Sequence record: ON529855.1
Direction: 5' to 3' (one strand)
Length of the DNA stretch: 64,000 nucleotides
Each line of letters opens with the position of its first letter. Positions within the stretch are counted from its first letter, which is position 1. A program made the position numbers and the translations under genes. Positions 27,226 through 43,062 of the stretch are shown piece by piece. The notes under the pieces are model-generated. The model saw nothing but the letters and a program-made list of their open reading frames with translations, was not told the DNA's origin and did no database searches.

Positions 27226-27539
27226 TGAACTGGATCATGAACGGGCAGGACCCTGACGCACCGCGCGGGCCGTGTCGCCGTCGATACCTGCCGATCGCCT
27301 TGGCGGCGGCCGCCGCCCTGTCGGGCTGCAAGGGCGTGGCCGAGGAAATCCACGCCGTCGGATTGCAGGCCCGCGACGATCTGATCGCGGGGAACACCTA
27401 CCACTACGACCCCCGCGTGAACCTCTGTTTCGCGGTCGGGGCCTACGCCCGTACCGGCAACTTCACCGACAATCTGACCCAGACCTATGTGCCATGCACC
27501 GACGAGGTCATGGCCCAAGCCCTGAAAGACGCTCCGTGA
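27225..27539 (+). CDS. putative lipoprotein
   Basis: Signal-like segment ending LSGC (lipobox). Confidence 0.65.
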   Translation: MNWIMNGQDPDAPRGPCRRRYLPIALAAAAALSGCKGVAEEIHAVGLQARDDLIAGNTYHYDPRVNLCFAVGAYARTGNFTDNLTQTYVPCTDEVMAQALKDAP

Positions 27540-28393
27540 GTTACATCGCCCCCGTCCTGCCGCACGACGTCTACGGCGAGGCCAATGTGCGCCTCGGCCG
27601 CGTAGAGGCTGAAGAGAACGTCACCATCCTGTTCGCGGTGGAGTCCGGGTCGCGCGCCTGGGGCTTCCCTTCGCCCGACAGCGACAACGACGTGCGCTTC
27701 TTCTACGTGCGCCCGATCAGTCACTACCTGGGCCTGGAGTCTCCGCGCGACGTGATCGAACGTCCGATCGAGGACCCGTGGGACCTGAACGGCTGGGACC
27801 TGCGCAAGGCGCTGCAACTGCTGGTCAAGGGCAACGCCACCGCCATGGAATGGCTGTCGAGCCCGCTGATCTACCGTGAGCACGGCCCGCTGCCGGCGCG
27901 CCTGCGCGACCTGATCAAGCGGCACGCCTCGCCGGAATCCAGCGCGCGGCACTACTTCGGCCTGACCCGGCAATGCTACGCCGGCGAAATCAGCAACCGG
28001 CCGACCGCCGCCCAGAACGCCCAGAACGAGGCTGACGGGGTCATCGTCAAGGGCCTGACCCAGGTCAACCTGAAGAAGTACCTCTATGCGGTGCGCGGCG
28101 CCATGTCGATCGCCTGGATCGCCCGCTACAAGGAGGTGCCGCCGATGACCATGCCGGCGCTGATGAGCCATGCCGTGGCCTCCGAAGCCGTCGCGGCCGA
28201 GATCACCACCCTGCTGCGGCGCAAGTCGACCATGGGCGAGTTCGGTCACGGCGACCGCATCGCGGTGCTGGATGAGTTCATCGAAGCCCAAATGGAATGG
28301 GTCAAGGCCCAGGGCTTCGACCGGCTGCCGATGAGCGAGGCCTTCGCCGCCGAGGCCGAACAGCTTCTGCTCGACGCCCTGGGGATCGGCTGA
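27536..28393 (+). CDS. DNA polymerase beta-superfamily nucleotidyltransferase (YcgL-like)
   Basis: ESGSRAWGFPSPDSDNDVRF, DLNGWDLRKAL.LL.KGN, KKYLYAVR motifs; GTG start. Confidence 0.88.
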   Translation: MSYIAPVLPHDVYGEANVRLGRVEAEENVTILFAVESGSRAWGFPSPDSDNDVRFFYVRPISHYLGLESPRDVIERPIEDPWDLNGWDLRKALQLLVKGNATAMEWLSSPLIYREHGPLPARLRDLIKRHASPESSARHYFGLTRQCYAGEISNRPTAAQNAQNEADGVIVKGLTQVNLKKYLYAVRGAMSIAWIARYKEVPPMTMPALMSHAVASEAVAAEITTLLRRKSTMGEFGHGDRIAVLDEFIEAQMEWVKAQGFDRLPMSEAFAAEAEQLLLDALGIG

Positions 28394-31733: not shown

Positions 31734-32972
31734 GTGAGCACCTTTGCTGTTCCGATCCTCGCGATCGACGACGTCTACGATCACCCCAACGCTGATCGCC
31801 TCTCCATCATCCGCATTCGCGGCTACGAAGCCGTCGCCGGCAAGGCCGAGGACGGATCGCACCGCTTCGTCAAGGGGGAGCGCATCATCTACGTGCCCGA
31901 GGGCGCGGTGGTGCCGGCCGCGCACCTGAAGGAGCGCGGCTACTGGAACGAGGCCAAGGACATCGGCCTGCTGGCGGGAACCAAGGGCAACCGCGTCAAG
32001 GCGATCACCCTGCGTGGCGTGCTGAGCCAGGGCCTTGTGTGGAAGACCGAACCCCTCGTCGGTGCAAAGGTCAAGGATCGCGCGACCGGAGACATCGTCG
32101 CCCAGGTGAATCCGGAGAAGCCTGCGCTGGCGGTCGCCACGGCCGAAGACGGCTCGAAAACGGCGGTGATGGTTGATTTCGGCGACGACGTCGCCGACTT
32201 CTTCGGCATCACCAAATACGACCCGCCGATCCCTCCGGGCCTGGACGGCGACGTCTTTGGCCTGTTCGAGGCGATGTTCAACTACGACATCGAGAACGCC
32301 AAGGCCTTCCCGAACCTGTTCACCGAGGACGACGTCGTCACGGTGACGGAGAAGCTGCACGGCACCTTCTGCCGGATGACCTACATGCCCGGCATCGAGC
32401 CGCGCGAGGACCTGTTCGGCGACGGCCGCGTGGCGATCACCTCCAAGGGCCTGGGCGCCGACGGCCTGGTGTTCAAGAACACCGCCTTCAACCGCCAGAA
32501 GAACGTCTACGTGCGCAACATGCTGCCGCTGGTGGACCACTTCGTCTCGGCCTGCAACCAGGACGCCAAGGGCCTGACGGTCCACCTGATGGGCGAGGTC
32601 TACGGCGCCGGCGTGCAGGACCTCAAGTACGGCCGCACCGAAGACCAGGGCTTCGCCGCCTTCGACGTCTGGATCGAGAAGTCGGGCTTCCTGGCCGAGG
32701 TCGAGAAGGATTACGCCTGCATCGCCTTCGGGGTGGAGCGGGTGCCGGTGCTGTTCGAGGGCTTCTACGACAAGGCGCTGATCGAAGACTTCGCCAAGGG
32801 CGACACCACGATCGACGGCGCCGCGAACATCCGCGAGGGCGTCGTCGTGACCCTGACCGGCGAGCAGGACAAACGCCCTGACGGCAACGGCCTGGGCGGC
32901 ACCCTGCGCCCGATCTGCAAGGTCGTGTCGGAAGCCTACCTGACCCGCAAGGGCGGGACCGAACTGCAATAG
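31734..32972 (+). CDS. RNA ligase, DRB0094 (Rnl2-related) family
   Basis: HPNADRL, LRGVLSQGL, TEKLHGT motif I, GEVYG.GVQ, FDV, REGVV, terminal K.VS..YL. Confidence 0.92.
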   Translation: MSTFAVPILAIDDVYDHPNADRLSIIRIRGYEAVAGKAEDGSHRFVKGERIIYVPEGAVVPAAHLKERGYWNEAKDIGLLAGTKGNRVKAITLRGVLSQGLVWKTEPLVGAKVKDRATGDIVAQVNPEKPALAVATAEDGSKTAVMVDFGDDVADFFGITKYDPPIPPGLDGDVFGLFEAMFNYDIENAKAFPNLFTEDDVVTVTEKLHGTFCRMTYMPGIEPREDLFGDGRVAITSKGLGADGLVFKNTAFNRQKNVYVRNMLPLVDHFVSACNQDAKGLTVHLMGEVYGAGVQDLKYGRTEDQGFAAFDVWIEKSGFLAEVEKDYACIAFGVERVPVLFEGFYDKALIEDFAKGDTTIDGAANIREGVVVTLTGEQDKRPDGNGLGGTLRPICKVVSEAYLTRKGGTELQ

Positions 32973-37186: not shown

Positions 37187-37273
37187 TGGAGGTGCGACCT
37201 GGACTCGAACCAGGATGAGGGTTTCCCCTACGGCTTATGAGGCCGCTGCCTATTCCAGCCGCGCCACCGCACC
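37187..37273 (-). tRNA. tRNA with CAT anticodon, long variable arm and U73 (Met/Ile2 identity uncertain)
   Basis: GGTGCGG acceptor stem; GCGGC-CTCATAA-GCCGT; V-arm AGGG-GAAA-CCCT; CCTGG-TTCGAGT-CCAGG; encoded TCCA end. Confidence 0.85.
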
Positions 37274-37284
37274 AAAAAGAAGTC

Positions 37285-37363
37285 CAGGCGTGCTCCCGTT
37301 ACACTAAACCGGCGAGGGTCATGACCCTCGGGCGCCGGCTGCGGGATCGAACCGCTCTACCTG
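37285..37363 (-). ncRNA. circularly permuted tRNA-like element
   Basis: Order T-arm (GCGG-TTCGATC-CCGC), acceptor-like stem GCCGGCG/CGCCGGT capped by a hairpin, D-arm (GTGT-AACGGGA-GCAC); closed by CAGG/CCTG. Confidence 0.7.
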
Positions 37364-37367
37364 TGTA

Positions 37368-37436
37368 TCCGCTGTCCGCGCCACGCCAGCGTCCGCCGCT
37401 AAGCGGGCGCCTGGAGAGTCGAACTCCGACAACGAA
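37368..37436 (-). ncRNA. second permuted tRNA-like element
   Basis: 9-bp closing stem TTCGTTGTC/GACAGCGGA, T-arm GGAG-TTCGACT-CTCC, capped acceptor-like stem; D-arm degenerate. Confidence 0.55.
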
Positions 37437-37974: not shown

Positions 37975-38312
37975 AGTGGGGAACTTTCTGTTCCAAGGCC
38001 CGGCAAGCCGGGGTTCCCCATACCCGTGGTCGCCCTTAGGCGGCCAGGAGGACTCGTTCGCCAGCGGCGAAGTTGTCGTTGGAAGCTTCGACAGTTGTCA
38101 AAGTTGGATCGTGAGCGGCCGAAACCGCCATGCAGACCCTAGCACTCGCCATTCAATCCCGTCACCAACGTCAATCGATACTGTTCGGCCCCTCAAACCG
38201 CGCCCGTCTCCCATCATAGGAGGGGGATTGGTGGAGCCGACGGGATTCGCACCCGTGTCTTGCCCGTCTGTTTCGTTCTCTCTGCTTCGGACCGAAGTCC
38301 TCCGCGCGACGA
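37975..38312 (-). ncRNA. ssrA: tmRNA, circularly permuted two-piece form
   Basis: Acceptor piece ends CGGCTCC-A-CCA at 38229; 36-nt spacer; coding piece starts GGGGCCG at 38192 (G3:U70); tag frame ...SNDNFAAGERVLLAA-stop (38036-38083); outer ends approximate. Confidence 0.9.
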
Positions 38313-38366: not shown

Positions 38367-38453
38367 TGGAGGGACGGGTGAGAATCGAACTCACGCCAGG
38401 CTTTCGCCAGGAGGATTTGCAGTCCCCCGCCTTACCACTCGGTCCACCGTCCC
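38367..38453 (-). tRNA. tRNA-Cys (GCA) with long variable arm
   Basis: GGGACGG/CCGTCCC acceptor, GGGGA-CTGCAAA-TCCTC, V-arm GGC-GAAA-GCC, T-loop TTCGATT, U73 and CCA. Confidence 0.9.
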
Positions 38454-38832: not shown

Positions 38833-39570
38833 ATGCTGCACAGTGTTCATGGTACGGTTCCTAAGCTTAAACGATGGTGCGGCCCCTCCGCCATCTCCAT
38901 CATTACAGGCCAGCCCTATCACCACGCTTTGGCGTTGCTTAAGGACGTCAAGGCCGCCAGACGAACCTACCGCGTAACGAAGGCGCCGATTGTCAAGGGC
39001 GCGTCATCGCCTAGCGTGCGCGCCGTTCTGAAGAGCCTGGGTTATCTGACGACGCAGCGGGTGACGCCGGCAGGGATCACCGTCGCGGCCTGGCTGGCGG
39101 CGCGTCCTCCCGCCGACCAGTTCACCACCTTCCTGATCGTGGCGGCCAACCACTGGATGGTGGTGCGCGGCGACGAGGCCTGCTGCGGCATTCTCGGGAC
39201 GCCGACGCCGGTCGAGCGCATGAAGTTCCGACGCGGCGTCGTCACCGAATGCTGGGTCGTCACGCCGTCCTCGCAGGGCGTGGCCCCGATCGTGACCGAG
39301 GCGCGCAAGCCGTCCGCTCGGGCAGCGTCCTCCTGGGACCGCAGCGAGGCGCGCGACCGCCGCGCCTTCGTCAAGCTGGCGCGCCAGCACGCGTTCACCT
39401 ACGACATCGTCCGGGATTGCGACACGATCCGCTACATGGAGATCGCGCCCTGCGCCGTCTTCCCCAAGGGGCTGGACACCCTGCACCATGACTGGGCGGA
39501 AACCCTGGATCGGGTCCGGCATTGCCTCGATCACCCCGAGGACGCCGCCTCGGGCAGCTACGGCCGCTGA
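38833..39570 (+). CDS. hypothetical protein, papain/C39-like Cys-His pattern
   Basis: GGAGA RBS; WCGPSAISIITG and NHWMVV; own promoter-like site and terminator. Confidence 0.75.
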   Translation: MLHSVHGTVPKLKRWCGPSAISIITGQPYHHALALLKDVKAARRTYRVTKAPIVKGASSPSVRAVLKSLGYLTTQRVTPAGITVAAWLAARPPADQFTTFLIVAANHWMVVRGDEACCGILGTPTPVERMKFRRGVVTECWVVTPSSQGVAPIVTEARKPSARAASSWDRSEARDRRAFVKLARQHAFTYDIVRDCDTIRYMEIAPCAVFPKGLDTLHHDWAETLDRVRHCLDHPEDAASGSYGR

Positions 39571-39574
39571 ACGC

Positions 39575-39610
39575 AAGAGCCCCGACCGATCACTCGGTCG
39601 GGGCTTTTTC
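39575..39610 (+). terminator. intrinsic terminator
   Basis: AAGAGCCCCGACCGA-TCAC-TCGGTCGGGGCTTTTT. Confidence 0.85.
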
Positions 39611-40560
39611 TCGCGCCATCGTCTGTGTCTCGGCCGGCGCAGCGTCAGAAGGGTGTGTCGCGAGACCTCCGTCGCGGTCCCAGGGCACTGGGGCTCCCTG
39701 GAACAAACCTCACCTGAACGTGGCTTTCCTCCCCAAGGGGCTGAAGGTGGCGGGGTCCAGGCGACCCTGTGGGGCTCACACGGCAAGGCCTCTTCTCAAT
39801 GCCAGGCATAGAAGTAGGCAGAGAGCATAGGTTCTTCCTACCCTCGTCATTGTCGTGGTCCGTTTTCCGTCTATCACAGCCTCTGGCTGCCGTCACGCCT
39901 GGTTCCCATTTCTAGGACGGCGTTCCCCTCAGAAGACGGGTCCTGGTAGACCGCGTGTGGCTCTTCAGCGCCTGACGGAACTCGACGACGTGGTTGCCGG
40001 CCGTCTGAACTAGCGTCCCCAAGCGCCCCCATGGACATGCCGTAGGGGTGTGGCAGGGTCCGCCCCACGCTGTGTCAGGATATACGACAATGAAGAGGGG
40101 GAGGTCAATACCGCCTCTGGCGGCCGTCACGCCTAATCGTTCGTCTCGGGCGGCGTTCCCGTCAGGCCTGATTGTCCCCGGCCGAGGTTTGTTCGGGGGA
40201 GCGGTGCGGTCAATCACCCCGACTCACGTTCTCTCGTAACCCGACAGCACGGGCTTAAGCGCGCACGAGCGCTGTGATACAGTCACGCGGTGGTCGACCT
40301 ATGGTGAGGTCATCGAGCCCAGTCGCGCAATCCCACCCTGTATGACGGGATTCATGGCTATCGTCAAGGGGTAACGGGCGCTCTCTCCCGGTCACGCCTC
40401 GTCCTGATGTCTCAGCCGGCGTTCGCTTCAGACAGTACGGCAATCTCGGGGCCGTCCCACGCTCCCGCTGTCGTCGGGCCTGTTCCCAGAGGAAGGTCTA
40501 CTCCAGGGCAGTCTGCTCCAGAGGCCAGGTCAGGGCGAACCCTGTGTGCTGCGCCTAAGG
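39600..40560 (-). ncRNA. array of four homologous unidentified structured RNA units
   Basis: Conserved core CTGA-N3-(GAA)CGCCG-NN-YRAG-A-N8-11-GGCGYGA at 39611-39648, 39893-39932, 40127-40165 and 40392-40431; long closing stems; no credible ORF. Confidence 0.65.
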
Positions 40561-40607
40561 ACCTTCAGCAAGATTGAAGCCTACCAGAACAAACCGAAAC
40601 GGGCAAA

Positions 40608-40640
40608 GAAAAACGGCCCCGATCCGAAGATCGGGGCCGC
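40608..40640 (-). terminator. terminator downstream of Ro60
   Basis: GCGGCCCCGATC-TTCG-GATCGGGGCCG-TTTTTCTTT on minus strand. Confidence 0.8.
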
Positions 40641-40697: not shown

Positions 40698-42083
40698 TCA
40701 GCCGCCGACGAGGCCGTCGTCGAACTCCATCGCCTCGACCTCACGGATATAGCGCAGGACGCTCTCCGAGAAGCCGTCGATGTGGACCCATCCGTTGCCG
40801 TAGCCGATGCCATGCGCATAGCTGGCGACGTTGATCATATAGGCCTTGCCGGCCTTGGGCGCCGGCAGTCGCCCGCCGCCCATGCCGCTGCTCAGCGTTC
40901 CCGACGCCTGTTCGTCGGTGATGACGATCAGGCGGTCGCAGGCGAACTGACGGTTCACCACGTCCACGGCCTGGGCCAGGGCGGTGCCCTGGTGCGGCTG
41001 CGAACGGATCACCGCCTCGACGCCCGCCATGCCCTTGCGGGCCGGGACCTCGACCAGACCGTTGGAGAAGGTCACGACGCGCACGTCGCCCGGCAGGATC
41101 GCCGCCAGCGTCGCCGCCGCATCCATCCGGGTCAGGTCCGACTTTCCGGACAGTTTTTGCCGCATGGAGTAGGAGACGTCGACCATGACCACGGTCGAAC
41201 CCTTCAAGGGTTCGGCCTGATCAATCGTCGCCACGAGGGCGTCGTCCAGCGCCCGCTCGAACGAGGGCGCATAACGCGCCGCCGCCGTGAAGCGGAAGGG
41301 CAGGACGCGGTCCGCGCCCTTGCGCGCGCGGATCGCAGCATTGACCAGATCGCGGTCGACGCCGGCCTGATCCATGTTGCGCAGGTTGCGCAGCAGGGCG
41401 AGGTAGCCCAGCTTGCCGTCGGCCAGCAGACGCGTGAACGTCGCCTTCTTGTCGGCGCCGCCCGACAGGGCGACTTCCCAGGTGTCGGGCGCCGTCAGTT
41501 CATTGTCGACCAGCTTCTTGTAGAGGGCCTCGCGGTCGTCGTTCGCCGGCTTGGCGTGCGCCAGGAACAGAACGTCGCGCAGGCGCACGGACTTGGCCCG
41601 GTCGTACTTGGCGATCTGATAGGCGTCGAAGTTGCCGAAGGCCAGCGACAGCCCCTTCTTCACCTGAGCGGACAGCGGCGCCTTCTTGCCGTCGGCGCGC
41701 ACCGGGTTGAGCGCCCAGTAGAGGGCCAGGAACTCGCTCAGTTCATCGGCGCGTTGGATGACGCGGGCGATGGTCAGCGACACCAGGGCCGAGCCGGACC
41801 CGCGTTGGGCCAGAACGACGAGCAGCAGAAGGGGGACGTGACGCAGCTTGGCGTCCTCACGCGCTTCAATCGCGATCTGGGCGAGGGTCTCGACCGGAAC
41901 TTCCTTGGCGAGGCTCTGGATACGGTCGGCGATCGACACGCCGCTCTCGTAGAAATTGTCTTCCCACAGCAGGCAGGACATGACCGACCGGCGCAGGGCC
42001 TGGGTCTTGGTCATCCGATCGGCCGGTGCGCCTTCATGGGTGCGCGCGGTGGTCGTCTTGGGCTTTGCGTTGATCGACGCCAT
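40698..42083 (-). CDS. rsr: Ro60 / TROVE-vWA RNA-binding protein
   Basis: TROVE motifs (CLLWEDNFYE, R...KLRHVP, YQIAKY, TWE..LS, ALLRNLRN, VLPFRF) and vWA MIDAS VDVSYSM...VITDEQ; GAGGAG RBS before ATG 42083. Confidence 0.95.
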   Translation of the reverse strand: MASINAKPKTTTARTHEGAPADRMTKTQALRRSVMSCLLWEDNFYESGVSIADRIQSLAKEVPVETLAQIAIEAREDAKLRHVPLLLLVVLAQRGSGSALVSLTIARVIQRADELSEFLALYWALNPVRADGKKAPLSAQVKKGLSLAFGNFDAYQIAKYDRAKSVRLRDVLFLAHAKPANDDREALYKKLVDNELTAPDTWEVALSGGADKKATFTRLLADGKLGYLALLRNLRNMDQAGVDRDLVNAAIRARKGADRVLPFRFTAAARYAPSFERALDDALVATIDQAEPLKGSTVVMVDVSYSMRQKLSGKSDLTRMDAAATLAAILPGDVRVVTFSNGLVEVPARKGMAGVEAVIRSQPHQGTALAQAVDVVNRQFACDRLIVITDEQASGTLSSGMGGGRLPAPKAGKAYMINVASYAHGIGYGNGWVHIDGFSESVLRYIREVEAMEFDDGLVGG

Positions 42084-42111
42084 AATGGGTCCCCTCCTCG
42101 TCTGGTCAAGC

Positions 42112-42279
42112 GACCAAGAGGTCGGGGAGGAACAAGCACGAGCCCGGTTCATCCGGTGCGTCTACCACTTCCGCCACCTGCACCAGAGATGCAGGCCAGG
42201 ACTTGAACCTGGATACCCTTGACGGGCGCCGGCTCCAGCGAAGTATAGGCTCGTTACGCCATCCCCGACCTCGCGGTCA
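42112..42279 (-). ncRNA. Y RNA (YrlA-like) 1, tRNA-Leu-derived permuted module
   Basis: Long terminal stem; V-arm, T-arm CCAGG-TTCAAGT-CCTGG, capped acceptor CCTGCA/TGCAGG, Leu-like D-arm GCGGAAGTGGTAGACGC. Confidence 0.85.
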
Positions 42280-42285
42280 GTGAAC

Positions 42286-42428
42286 TCCGGCGCTCTGGTA
42301 GGAAGGCGGGGGAACATGCGCGACCGGATGCGGGATCGAACCGCGAGACCGGGGGTTTGAATCCCGGCTTATCAACCAGCGATGTAACCGACCGCTCTCA
42401 CCACCCGCCCACCAACCAGGGCGCCGGA
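42286..42428 (-). ncRNA. Y RNA-like 2, non-permuted tRNA-like module with TCA loop
   Basis: Terminal stem TCCGGCGC/GCGCCGGA; same TGGTG / TGTTCC motif; D-arm, GGG-ATTCAAA-CCC, T-arm in normal order. Confidence 0.7.
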
Positions 42429-42436
42429 AAAGCAGA

Positions 42437-42591
42437 AACATGAAGGCGGCGGGGGAATAAGCGACCCCACTCTTTTTTAGGCGTGCTACCGTTACACCAA
42501 ACGCCGCTAGGCGACGTTGCGGAATCGAACCGCTCATCCCGCTCCACATGCGATGAAAGTGACGTCTATCGCCACCCACCGCCTTCATGTT
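42437..42591 (-). ncRNA. Y RNA (YrlA-like) 3
   Basis: 13-bp terminal stem AACATGAAGGCGG/CCGCCTTCATGTT; T-arm GCGG-TTCGATT-CCGC, capped acceptor CGTCGC/GCGGCG, D-arm GTGT-AACGGTA-GCAC. Confidence 0.85.
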
Positions 42592-42599
42592 GTTGGCTC

Positions 42600-42774
42600 A
42601 GAAGCGTGTGGTGGATCGACAGGGGAACCGGCGGAAAGGCGCCGTTTGGACTATCGTTCTACCAACTGAACTACCGCCGCGCCCGAAGGTGCGCCGAGTG
42701 GGATTCGAACCCACGACCTACAGTTTGCGAAGAAGGCCTCTCCCTCACCACCTGTCGATCCGCCACACGCTTCT
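42600..42774 (-). ncRNA. Y RNA (YrlA-like) 4
   Basis: 24-bp terminal stem; ACTGT-AGGTC, T-arm GTGGG-TTCGAAT-CCCAC, capped acceptor, D-arm GTTC-AGTTGGTA-GAAC, ATAGT: a tRNA opened at the anticodon loop. Confidence 0.88.
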
Positions 42775-42780
42775 CAACCC

Positions 42781-42930
42781 TGTCCTAGACAGACCCGAGG
42801 ACCCAACCCCGGACGAGGAACCGAAGTTCCCCGGCGGGATCAGGATCGTCCGGGAATAGGCGGAACCGAGAGCGGGGCCAAGGCCCCCACGTACCAAAAA
42901 CGAAGAACTCGGTCCCTGTCGCCACGGACA
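42781..42930 (-). ncRNA. structured leader RNA upstream of the Y RNA array
   Basis: TGTCC/GGACA and GACAG/CTGTC outer stems; 9-bp GGGACCGAG/CTCGGTTCC and CCCGGACGA/TCGTCCGGG; UUCG hairpin. Confidence 0.5.
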
Positions 42931-42934
42931 ATGA

Positions 42935-42964
42935 CTGTGTGCCCGATCCCGGTTCAGGTGTCAA
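42935..42964 (-). promoter_or_regulatory. putative promoter of Y RNA-Ro60 operon
   Basis: TTGACA at 42959-42964 followed at 16-17 nt by a weak GCACACA -10. Confidence 0.45.
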
Positions 42965-42996: not shown

Positions 42997-43030
42997 AAAA
43001 AGAAAACCCCCGGCCGAAGCCAGGGGTTTC
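42997..43030 (-). terminator. terminator after repressor-like gene
   Basis: GGAAACCCCTGGC-TTCG-GCCGGGGTTTCTTTTT. Confidence 0.75.
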
Positions 43031-43062
43031 CACGACATCTGACGTCGGCGGGGGTTCCAGGG

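What the first reader, a model, noticed from the sequence alone, without database searches (positions are those of the whole stretch)
40698..42774. Phage Ro60 gene preceded by a tandem array of four Y-RNA-like elements, each built from a different tRNA
Seen: four back-to-back long inverted repeats (42112-42279, 42286-42428, 42437-42591, 42600-42774) directly upstream of a TROVE-vWA gene on the same strand. All four carry the same bulged-helix signature, 5' TGG(C/T)G opposite 3' RTTCC, within otherwise unrelated stems. Three enclose a tRNA circularly permuted at the anticodon loop (T-arm, acceptor stem closed by a loop, D-arm). Element 1 has a Leu-like D-arm and variable arm, while elements 3 and 4 have class I-like arms. 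Established: bacterial and phage Ro60 orthologues bind YrlA RNAs with exactly this permuted tRNA domain. Inference: the phage keeps a panel of independently derived Y RNAs that could tether Ro60 to different RNA-processing partners or act as decoys for tRNA-targeting defence nucleases. An array of this size and mixed ancestry appears unusual.
Basis: partly seen in the sequence, partly recalled or inferred. Interest (0 to 1): 0.88.

Follow-up and report, generated by a model that had tools for sequence, protein, structure and literature searches.

The report
Phage Ro60 gene with Y-RNA array
A giant Brevundimonas phage carries a Ro60 RNA-binding protein gene preceded by five (not four) small structured RNAs with a shared Ro60-docking motif and mostly tRNA-like heads, a real but already known kind of locus that is common in this protein's relatives.

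Summary
The window is Brevundimonas phage vB_BpoS-Domovoi. Upstream of its TROVE+vWA (Ro60) gene lie back-to-back long-stem RNAs at the stated coordinates, all sharing one motif.

Corrections and additions:
- There are five modules. A short, highly conserved one without a tRNA-like head lies at 42845-42932.
- The shared signature is larger than reported: outer stem, UGGYGNAG, a covarying 7-9 bp helix II, (U)UACUUC, then CG.YU.RUUCC and the outer stem. It corresponds in position and partial sequence to the GNCGAA and YUAY motifs published for YrlA.
- E4, E3 and E1 carry permuted tRNA domains (T-arm, closed acceptor, D-arm). E1 is tRNA-Leu-like. E4 is generic class I. E3 has no identifiable parent tRNA.
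- E2 is not permuted. Its order is D-like, anticodon-like, T, as in Deinococcus Yrn1.

The claim that the array is unusual fails. Relatives CcrColossus and CcrPW have eight modules, Gurke has six, and a Rhizobium phage has seven or eight. Chromosomal Caulobacterales Ro60 loci have up to five, next to RtcB or a Pnkp-like RNA-repair enzyme. Y RNAs near phage Ro60, including CcrColossus, were reported in 2014.

Verdict: a new, unannotated member of a known kind. Function (Ro60 RNPs in RNA surveillance or repair) is inferred, not shown.

The parts
43002..43031 (-). Intrinsic terminator ending the upstream HTH-gene unit. It marks the 5' limit of the Y-RNA/Ro60 unit.
   Evidence: 13-bp stem, UUCG loop, T run. 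Present in all five related phages.
42959..42964 (-). TTGACA, a -35-like hexamer inside an invariant TGTTGACA block about 27 nt upstream of the first module. It is the candidate promoter of the whole unit.
   Evidence: Invariant in Domovoi, Marchewka, Gurke, CcrColossus and CcrPW while the flanks vary. Promoter function is inferred. No convincing -10 element was identified.
42845..42932 (-). It has an outer stem, UGGCGACAG (42916-42924), helix II, GUUCUUCG (42901-42908), a terminal GC hairpin (42874-42888) and CCGCCUAUUCC (42853-42863). There is no tRNA-like head.
   Evidence: It is the best conserved module: 0.94 identity to Gurke and 0.80 to CcrColossus. The consensus fold has 3 compensatory pairs in helix II.
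42775..42844 (-). 70-nt spacer with small hairpins. Gurke and CcrColossus carry an extra short module at the equivalent position, so this may be a degenerate remnant.
   Evidence: Not a module by any of my scans.
42600..42774 (-). Features:
- 23-bp outer stem
- UGGUGAGG (42743-42750)
- helix II (42736-42743 with 42633-42640)
- CUUCUUCGC
- anticodon-stem halves (42720-42724 with 42650-42654)
- variable loop AGGUC
- T-arm (42698-42714)
- 7-bp acceptor closed by UUCG, with its 3' strand followed by ACC (42674-42697)
- D-arm (42655-42673)
- GCCGGUUCC (42624-42632)
   Evidence: Rfam YrlA 27.1 bits; re-permuted core accepted by ARAGORN; class I tRNA matches at 73-80% over the full length.
42437..42591 (-). 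Module E3, YrlA-type. It has a 17-bp outer stem, UGGCGAUAG (42566-42574), UUUCAUCGC, a V-like hairpin, a T-arm (42518-42534), a closed acceptor (42500-42517), a small-loop D-arm UGGUGUAACGGUAGCACG (42482-42499) and CGCUUAUUCC (42454-42463).
   Evidence: No similarity to annotated tRNAs outside its own family.
42286..42428 (-). Module E2, Yrn1-like (non-permuted). It has a long outer stem, UGGUGAGAG (42395-42403), GUUACAUCGC, a D-like hairpin (42371-42383), an anticodon-like arm with loop AUUCAAA (42348-42368), a T-arm (42329-42345) and CGCAUGUUCC (42311-42320).
   Evidence: tRNA-Sec model 21.8 bits, E 0.13; ARAGORN only at relaxed threshold, using the module's stem as acceptor; RNAalifold on five orthologues, 15 compensatory pairs.
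42112..42279 (-). Module E1, YrlA-type with a class II tRNA-Leu-like head. It has UGGCGUAAC (42253-42261), UAUACUUCGC, a long variable arm (42215-42227), a T-arm GGUUCAAGUCC (42196-42212), a closed acceptor (42177-42195), the Leu-type D-arm UGGCGGAAGUGGUAGACGCA (42157-42176) and UGCUUGUUCC (42129-42138).
   Evidence: (all annotated matches among the 25 listed rows outside its own family are tRNA-Leu, 78-83% identity).
40698..42083 (-). Ro60 orthologue (TROVE ring plus vWA), 461 aa. Its Shine-Dalgarno GAGGAGGGG lies at 42091-42099, 12 nt after module E1.
   Evidence: Pfam TROVE 8.7e-12 and VWA_2 4e-06. PDB 9KOP/9L5Y phiLo Ro60 at E 1.3e-20 over residues 11-452. Annotated only as a hypothetical protein in ON529855.
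40613..40640 (-). Intrinsic terminator closing the unit.
   Evidence: 12-bp stem, UUCG loop, T run. The only terminator-like hit between 42932 and this site is a weak 5-bp one inside the Ro60 CDS at 41589-41576; none lies within or just after the array.

Best explanation
This is a single transcription unit of a jumbo phage. It consists of a promoter, five Y-RNA modules (E0, E4, E3, E2, E1) separated by only 6-8 nt between E4 and E1 (70 nt between E0 and E4), the Ro60 gene and a terminator.

Proposed mechanism:
1. The precursor is cut into separate RNAs of about 90-175 nt by host RNA-processing enzymes, as shown for M. smegmatis YrlA and YrlB, which are processed from a single precursor upstream of rsr.
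2. Each RNA docks on the phage Ro60 ring through the conserved asymmetric loop, 5' UGGYGNA opposite 3' G.YU.RUUCC, clamped between the terminal stem and helix II.
3. The distal head differs between modules: a plain hairpin, two class I-type permuted tRNA mimics, a cloverleaf-order mimic and a class II tRNA-Leu mimic. The head decides what the RNP contacts or excludes.
4. By analogy with Deinococcus, Salmonella and Thermus phage phiLo, the RNPs gate Ro60 and tether it to host PNPase or other tRNA-recognising enzymes. This serves RNA surveillance, decay or repair during infection.

Shown here: the anatomy, motif conservation, covariation, gene linkage and linkage to RNA-repair genes in relatives. 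Inferred: transcription, processing, Ro60 binding and the cellular role.
For: Anatomy and statistics:
- Folds are much more stable than shuffles.
- Five pattern hits fall in 821 nt, against 0.25 expected per window.

Shared module across 72 pattern-selected modules from 33 phage-record and viral-contig loci:
- G2, G3 and G5 of the 5' motif and the last C of the 3' motif are invariant.
- Helix II was not used to select the elements. It is 69.8% paired, and all 9 pairs show changes on both sides.
- The covariation score is 0.664, against 0.20 for shuffles and 0.11-0.22 when partners are slid.
- A third block, (U)UACUUC / UUCUUC / UUCAUC, sits 16-17 nt after the motif.
- These blocks correspond in position and partial sequence to the GNCGAAN0-1G and YUAY features of YrlA (PMC4201824).

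Family resemblance:
- Rfam YrlA hits E4.
- It hits orthologous and related modules at 30-52 bits in CcrColossus, Gurke, a Xanthomonas phage and Caulobacterales chromosomes.
- Re-permuted heads are accepted as tRNAs.

One unit: terminators flank the unit, none lies within or just after the array (one weak 5-bp hit inside the Ro60 CDS), and a conserved TGTTGACA lies upstream.

Protein: TROVE plus vWA, with full-length similarity to phiLo Ro60, which binds two upstream-encoded Yrl RNAs and host PNPase (PMC12135203).

RNA-repair context:
- RtcB lies directly upstream of the array in a Caulobacterales MAG.
- A kinase-phosphatase-ligase (Pnkp-like) enzyme lies downstream of Ro60 in Asticcacaulis.
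- RlaP and an RNA ligase lie in this window.
Against: - There are no expression, processing or binding data for this phage or any close relative.
- No module reaches the Rfam YrlA gathering score (best 27.1 bits against 69).
- The literal GNCGAA motif is replaced by GGCG(U/A) or GGUGA.
- The GG/CC pairs of the docking helix never vary, so they give no covariation evidence.
- My element set was chosen with a pattern that required the motif and a 5-bp outer stem, so conservation of those parts is partly built in.
- No PNPase partner or specific target is indicated by the sequence.
Confidence: 0.7

Rival explanations
1. The tRNA-like heads act mainly as decoys or competitive inhibitors of host tRNA-directed defence nucleases or tRNA-modifying toxins. 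Ro60 would serve only to stabilise them.
For: - Heads of different tRNA classes sit in one array, including a Leu mimic.
- The phage invests in tRNAs, a tmRNA, RlaP and an RNA ligase.
- Competitive inhibition of an anticodon nuclease by YrlA was proposed for Salmonella, where YrlA is not cleaved (PMC7790460).
Against: - E4, E3 and E1 are opened exactly at the anticodon loop, the target of most known anticodon nucleases. Only E2 keeps such a loop.
- E0 has no tRNA-like head yet is the most conserved module.
- Comparable arrays sit in bacterial chromosomes next to RtcB or Pnkp-like genes, so the system is not specifically a phage counter-defence.
Confidence: 0.15
2. The structures are a cis-acting leader of the Ro60 mRNA, for autoregulation by Ro60 binding or for transcript stabilisation, rather than separate stable RNAs.
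For: - Same strand with no internal terminator.
- The last module ends 12 nt before the Shine-Dalgarno sequence.
Against: - Five to eight independent stem-closed modules with conserved, different heads is far more than a leader needs.
- In bacterial relatives the modules are split into groups, each preceded by its own palindromic promoter-like site.
- M. smegmatis YrlA and YrlB upstream of rsr are processed into stable Ro60-bound RNAs (PMC4201824).
Confidence: 0.08
3. They are decayed or rearranged tRNA genes, or permuted tRNA genes that yield working tRNAs.
For: - T-arms, D-arms and acceptor stems are tRNA-grade.
- Annotators called a tRNA-Ser in Gurke and a tRNA-Gln in CcrColossus inside homologous modules.
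Against: - There is no anticodon loop in three of the heads.
- ARAGORN finds nothing in the native order at its default threshold.
- The non-tRNA parts (docking motif, helix II, UACUUC) are the conserved parts across distant phages and bacteria, with covariation. That argues for selection on a different function.
Confidence: 0.03

Closest known systems
YrlA RNAs of Salmonella Typhimurium and Mycobacterium smegmatis (Rfam RF02553; Chen et al. 2014, PMC4201824)
   Same: - Encoded next to Ro60 on the same strand.
- Terminal stem and a 5' docking motif, followed by a YUAY-type block.
- T-arm, closed acceptor stem-loop and D-arm in that order (E4, E3, E1).
- In M. smegmatis the RNAs lie upstream of rsr and come from one precursor.
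   Different: - The docking motif is UGGYGNAG rather than GNCGAAN0-1G, and a conserved 3' strand (RUUCC) is recognisable.
- Scores are far below the Rfam threshold.
- One head is a class II Leu mimic with a long variable arm, whereas published YrlA D and T arms are described as nearly invariant.
- There are five modules rather than one or two.
Y RNA-like RNAs of Caulobacter phage CcrColossus (reported among 22 phages by Chen et al. 2014, as cited in PMC12135203)
   Same: - Orthologous locus: dUTPase, HTH gene, array, Ro60.
- Same module order, and E0 is 80% identical.
- Same docking motif.
   Different: - CcrColossus has eight modules, including two class II-like heads. Domovoi has five plus a 70-nt remnant.
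- I could not see the 2014 supplementary table, so I do not know how many of the eight were reported.
Yrn1 of Deinococcus radiodurans
   Same: E2 has the D-like, anticodon-like, T order, with the Ro60-binding stem in the place of the acceptor stem. Both strands of the docking helix are conserved, as described for Yrn1 (PMC4201824).
   Different: No sequence similarity to Yrn1 was tested. E2 sits in an array together with YrlA-type modules, whereas the two architectures were described as separate lineages.
Yrl1 and Yrl2 with phiRo60 of Thermus phage phiLo (PMC12135203; PDB 9KOP, 9L5Y)
   Same: - Phage Ro60 with Y-like RNAs directly upstream.
- The protein is similar over its full length (E 1.3e-20).
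- Both RNAs bind the protein and host PNPase in vitro.
   Different: phiLo has two RNAs defined by a CGAA motif, and no tRNA-like heads are described for them. Domovoi has five modules, four of them with tRNA-like heads.
YrlB (Salmonella, M. smegmatis)
   Same: E0 is a short Ro60-motif RNA without a full tRNA-like domain, encoded in the same cluster.
   Different: No sequence relationship was tested. E0 lacks the T-arm noted in M. smegmatis YrlB.

Membership tests
YrlA (Rfam RF02553 / Chen et al. 2014) | Encoded within 4 kb of a Ro60 orthologue on the same strand | tested here: met
   All modules lie 29-850 nt upstream of the TROVE+vWA gene on the minus strand.
YrlA (Rfam RF02553 / Chen et al. 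2014) | tRNA-like domain in the order T stem-loop, closed 'acceptor' stem-loop, D stem-loop | tested here: met
   Met for E4, E3 and E1. Not met for E2 (opposite order) or E0 (no such domain).
YrlA (Rfam RF02553 / Chen et al. 2014) | GNCGAAN0-1G motif near the 5' end | tested here: not met
   None of the five has the literal motif. At the equivalent place they have GGCGACAG, GGUGAGGG, GGCGAUAG, GGUGAGAG and GGCGUAAC. Relatives range from UGGCGUAG to CGGCGAAG, the latter being literal. This is therefore a variant of the motif.
YrlA (Rfam RF02553 / Chen et al. 2014) | Score at or above the curated Rfam gathering threshold (69 bits) | tested here: not met
   No hit at gathering. The best is 27.1 bits, on E4, as a local match to model positions 23-85. 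Relatives reach 30-52 bits.
YrlA (Rfam RF02553 / Chen et al. 2014) | Bound by Ro60/Rsr in vivo, and carrying tRNA modifications (pseudouridine 55, dihydrouridine) | not testable with these tools
   Needs RIP and modification mapping.
Y RNA in the broad sense | 5' and 3' ends pair into a terminal stem that carries a conserved bulged helix or loop used by Ro60 | tested here: met
   The terminal stems are 8-23 bp and unrelated in sequence. The loop motif is conserved and the flanking helices covary.
Yrn1-type Y RNA (for E2) | D-like, anticodon-like and T arms in tRNA order, with the Ro60 stem replacing the acceptor stem | tested here: met
   RNAalifold consensus of five orthologues gives 47 pairs, 15 of them with compensatory changes. 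ARAGORN at a relaxed threshold uses the module stem as the acceptor.
Functional tRNA gene | Cloverleaf in native order with a 7-nt anticodon loop | tested here: not met
   ARAGORN at default settings finds nothing in 42112-42932. E4, E3 and E1 are opened at the anticodon loop.
Ro60 / TROVE protein | TROVE (HEAT-repeat ring) domain followed by a vWA domain | tested here: met
   PF05731 at 8.7e-12 and PF13519 at 4e-06. Aligned over residues 11-452 to phiLo Ro60. No structure was predicted here.

The most novel reading that the evidence does not exclude
The array is a deliberately diverse panel. One Ro60 protein would be loaded with a plain, two class I, a cloverleaf-order and a class II (Leu) tRNA mimic, so that the RNPs recognise, compete for or recruit enzymes specific to different tRNA classes. 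Candidate partners are host tRNA-directed nucleases, and repair and processing enzymes such as RNase P, the CCA-adding enzyme, RtcB/Rnl and RlaP. This would give the phage class-resolved protection or repair of its 25-tRNA translation kit.

A related evolutionary reading is that each YrlA-type module descends from a head-to-tail tRNA dimer. Three observations fit:
- An ACC (E4) or ACCA (CcrColossus) remnant follows the acceptor 3' strand.
- tRNA finders read the 5' halves of modules as tRNAs.
- UGGCGUAG resembles tRNA positions 8-15, and GUUCC resembles the T-loop.
Probability: 0.15. Interest if true: 0.75.

Novelty: new member of a known kind. Interest (0 to 1): 0.35.

Why it matters
The locus adds an unannotated Ro60/Y-RNA system to a cultivable phage-host pair (Brevundimonas pondensis). 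The genome record calls the protein hypothetical and lists none of the RNAs.

Two results could be useful to the field:
- This Ro60 clade, in Caulobacterales and in several phage lineages, routinely carries 3-8 modules. They share a three-block signature that the Rfam YrlA model misses at its threshold. Y RNAs are therefore likely under-counted.
- Both permuted (YrlA) and cloverleaf-order (Yrn1-like) architectures, plus a tRNA-Leu mimic, coexist in one operon. The literature treats the two architectures as separate lineages.

The biological role of bacterial and phage Y RNAs is still open. A lytic jumbo phage whose five modules can be deleted one at a time would be a convenient test bed.

Tried and rejected
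- Rfam at gathering thresholds found no Y RNA in the window. Only the permissive mode did.
- ARAGORN on the native sequences found nothing at default settings.
- BLAST of re-permuted E3 and of E2 against the phage collection found only their own orthologues, so no parent tRNA can be named for them.
- A stricter scan requiring both the outer stem and at least 5 bp of helix II lost true modules with one mismatch (for example E3) and admitted weak 5+5 hits. I replaced it with a 5'-signature count that has a measured background of 0.15 per kb against 1.79 per kb upstream of Ro60.
- I looked for covariation between the variable C/U at motif position 4, or position 6, and the 3' strand, and found none (inspection). 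The loop is therefore treated as protein-read rather than fully paired.
- The 2014 supplementary tables and the two Wolin reviews were not available, so I cannot say how many CcrColossus modules were already listed.
- The sigma-70-like hit at 42109-42082 overlaps the Ro60 start codon and is disregarded.
- Repeat or mobile-element explanations were rejected because the stems share no sequence, only the motif.
Full report
**Identity of the window.** The region is 100% identical to Brevundimonas phage vB_BpoS-Domovoi (ON529855, 352.7 kb, Dolichocephalovirinae). Window position plus 186000 gives the record position. The record annotates the gene at 40698-42083 (minus strand) as a hypothetical protein. 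It annotates nothing in the 979-nt gap between that gene and the upstream HTH gene.

**The protein.** The 461-aa product has a TROVE domain (8.7e-12) followed by a vWA domain. It aligns over residues 11-452 with the Ro60 of Thermus phage phiLo, PDB 9KOP/9L5Y, at E 1.3e-20. It is a Ro60 orthologue.

**Checking the observation.**
- Each of the four intervals folds into a long terminal stem around a structured core. z-scores are -4.1 to -6.1 and no shuffle is as stable.
It hits once elsewhere in the window on both strands. Dinucleotide shuffles average 0.25 hits per window.
I call it E0.

**Anatomy of the shared module.** I anchored 72 non-identical, pattern-selected modules from 33 phage-record and viral-contig loci on the two motifs. 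The common plan is:
- outer stem
- U-G-G-(C/U)-G-N-A-G
- a helix II strand of 7-9 nt
- (U)UACUUC, UUCUUC or UUCAUC at +16/17
- a variable head
- the returning helix II strand
- C-G-N-Y-U-N-R-U-U-C-C
- outer stem

G2, G3 and G5 of the 5' motif and the final C of the 3' motif are invariant. Helix II was not part of my selection rule. It is paired in 69.8% of cells, and all nine of its pairs show changes on both sides. Over the whole structure the covariation score is 0.664, against 0.20 for column shuffles and 0.11-0.22 when partners are slid by 1-3 columns.

The outer stem was partly selected for, so its high pairing is not independent evidence. The two G-C pairs of the motif never vary and say nothing either way. 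I found no covariation between the variable positions of the loop and the 3' strand. The 7-nt / 9-nt loop therefore looks like a protein-read surface rather than a helix.

The 5' block and the UAC block correspond in position and partial sequence to the GNCGAAN0-1G and YUAY features that Chen et al. described for YrlA and proposed as the Rsr site (PMC4201824).

**The heads.**
- E4 has, in order: the 3' half of an anticodon stem, a 5-nt variable loop AGGUC, a T-arm, a 7-bp acceptor closed by UUCG, a D-arm and the 5' half of the anticodon stem. Rfam YrlA matches this core at 27.1 bits, E 0.0019.
- E3 has a V-like hairpin, a T-arm, a closed acceptor and a small-loop D-arm.
- E1 has a long variable arm, a GGUUCAAGUCC T-arm, a closed acceptor and the D-arm UGGCGGAAGUGGUAGACGCA.

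When I cut each core in the acceptor loop and rejoined it at the anticodon position, ARAGORN called a tRNA for E4, E1 and E3. It called none on the native order at default settings.

Similarity searches of the re-permuted cores gave different outcomes:
- E1 matches, outside its own family, only genes annotated tRNA-Leu among the listed annotated hits, at 78-83% identity.
- E4 matches Met, Gly, Lys and Arg tRNAs at 73-80% over the full length, so it is a generic class I shape.
- E3 has no detectable parent.

E2 is different. Its order is D-like hairpin, anticodon-like arm and T-arm, with the module's own stem in the acceptor position. RNAalifold on five orthologues supports this with 15 compensatory pairs. 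That is the orientation described for Deinococcus Yrn1. E0 has only a GC hairpin as its head. Its fold is supported by three compensatory pairs between the Brevundimonas and Caulobacter phage lineages.

**One transcription unit.**
- A strong terminator (43031-43002) ends the HTH gene.
- An invariant TGTTGACA lies about 27 nt before E0 in five phages whose flanks differ.
- Spacers between E4, E3, E2 and E1 are 6-8 nt.
- No terminator-like site lies within or just after the array. The only internal hit is a weak 5-bp one inside the Ro60 CDS. A strong terminator (40640-40613) follows the gene.

Co-transcription and later processing are inferred. The precedent is M. smegmatis, where YrlA and YrlB lie upstream of rsr, come from a single precursor, and YrlA is cut by RNase P and receives CCA. 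The acceptor 3' strand of E4 is followed by ACC, and one CcrColossus module has ACCA there.

**Is the array unusual? No.**

In the same phage subfamily:

| Phage | Modules |
|---|---|
| Marchewka | 5 |
| Gurke | 6 |
| CcrColossus, CcrPW | 8 |

In other lineages:
- An IMG/VR contig (L026) has eight modules, and a Xanthomonas phage has five by the 5' signature.
- A Rhizobium phage has seven or eight GUUGCGA-type modules, including a cloverleaf-order one and a Leu-like one immediately before Ro60.

The closest cellular Ro60 proteins (61-64% identity) are chromosomal genes of Caulobacter, Asticcacaulis and Phenylobacterium. These loci have up to five modules upstream (mostly 3-4). Two per locus are recognised by Rfam YrlA at 39-51 bits. 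With a 5'-signature count, density is 1.79 per kb upstream of Ro60 against 0.15 per kb elsewhere. Of the 82 loci with enough upstream sequence, 62 have at least two modules. The mode is three and the maximum is eight. Among the loci I checked, the Leu-like head was found only in phages: the Dolichocephalovirinae and the Rhizobium phage.

**Function.** Nothing here measures function. The context points to RNA surveillance or repair:
- RtcB lies directly upstream of the array in one Caulobacterales genome.
- A kinase-phosphatase-RNA-ligase fusion lies downstream of Ro60 in Asticcacaulis.
- This window itself encodes RlaP (2e-72) and an RNA ligase, besides tRNAs and a tmRNA.

Published work supplies the analogies:
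- A Y RNA tethers Rsr to PNPase in Deinococcus.
- phiLo Ro60, its Yrl RNAs and host PNPase form complexes.
- A comparative jumbo-phage study lists TROVE with a tRNA-like partner among RNA-repair adaptations (PMC12135203, PMC7824862).
- Competitive inhibition of an anticodon nuclease by YrlA has been proposed (PMC7790460). However, three of the four tRNA-like heads here lack the anticodon loop.

**What is and is not new.** Y RNAs next to phage Ro60, explicitly including CcrColossus, were reported in 2014. Domovoi's are unannotated, and the genome paper does not mention them. They fall below both the Rfam threshold and, probably, the 2014 cut-off. I therefore file them as a new member of a known kind. 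They work like YrlA, YrlB and Yrn1, but as curated they are not members of RF02553. Three points may be under-appreciated:
- the three-block signature
- the frequency of 3-8-module arrays
- the coexistence of both head orientations with a class II mimic

**Limits.**
- The element census rests on my own patterns, not on a calibrated model.
- The Leu assignment rests on 47-70 nt alignments.
- I could not read the 2014 supplementary tables.

Noticed in passing
window 39570-40612 (minus strand); cores at 39876-39933, 40110-40165, 40391-40432: The 1.1-kb non-coding stretch just downstream of the Ro60 terminator holds three repeat units of about 235-265 nt. Each has a conserved core CUGAnGgGAACGCCGnCnnAGA, about 10 nt, then AGGCGUGAC, with an invariant ACGCC/GGCGU hairpin. 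The core is kept in Marchewka and in the 72%-identical Gurke. No Rfam family matches. These are possibly three paralogous unknown small RNAs.
   Followed up: partly
window 38036-38291 (minus strand): A permuted (two-piece, alphaproteobacterial type) tmRNA scores 60.2 bits against a gathering score of 47. The genome paper states that no tmRNA could be detected, and the record has no such feature.
   Followed up: partly
window about 37290-37400 (minus strand), between the two tRNA-Met genes: This is another permuted T-arm / interrupted acceptor / D-arm domain and a clear paralogue of the E3 head. The T-arm GAGCGGUUCGAUCCCGCA matches 17 of 19 positions and the D-arm UAGUGUAACGGGAGCACGCCU matches 19 of 21. 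It is preceded by UGGCGCGG-ACAGCGG-AUACACA, a degenerate 5' signature, but has no RUUCC return strand. It could be a sixth, truncated or differently closed Y-like element inside the tRNA cluster.
   Followed up: partly
window 38367-38453 and 37187-37273 (minus strand): The annotated tRNA-Cys(GCA) and one tRNA-Met(CAU) are 87 nt long with long variable arms and encoded CCA. That is a class II shape, which is unusual for these anticodons. The Cys one keeps U73. Both are conserved in related phages.
   Followed up: no
L003 2270-2344 (Gurke) and L004 1675-1742 (CcrColossus): The tRNA-Ser and tRNA-Gln annotated in GenBank upstream of Ro60 are the 5' halves of Y modules: outer stem read as acceptor, then the docking motif, then the T-arm. 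They are probably mis-annotations.
   Followed up: partly
L045 about 2056-2080 and 2752-2775; L046 about 2092-2110, 2268-2290 and 2727-2750; L055 about 2048-2125 and 2585-2605: In chromosomal Caulobacterales Ro60 loci a palindrome TTGTTGCA-N4-TGCAACAA precedes groups of Y modules several times per locus. It looks like an operator or promoter for an unknown regulator. It is absent from the phage array, which has a single TGTTGACA instead.
   Followed up: no
window 27536-28393 and 31734-32972 (plus strand): These encode RlaP (RNA-repair-pathway nucleotidyltransferase, PF10127, 2e-72; annotated only as a putative nucleotidyltransferase) and an RNA ligase with a PHA02142 OB domain. They are RNA-repair genes lying about 9-15 kb from the Ro60 unit.
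   Followed up: partly
window 42674-42697 (E4) and L004 about 1735-1785: The acceptor 3' strand of E4 is followed by ACC, and that of a CcrColossus module by ACCA. This looks like a fossil CCA end and fits an origin of the permuted heads from head-to-tail tRNA dimers.
   Followed up: no
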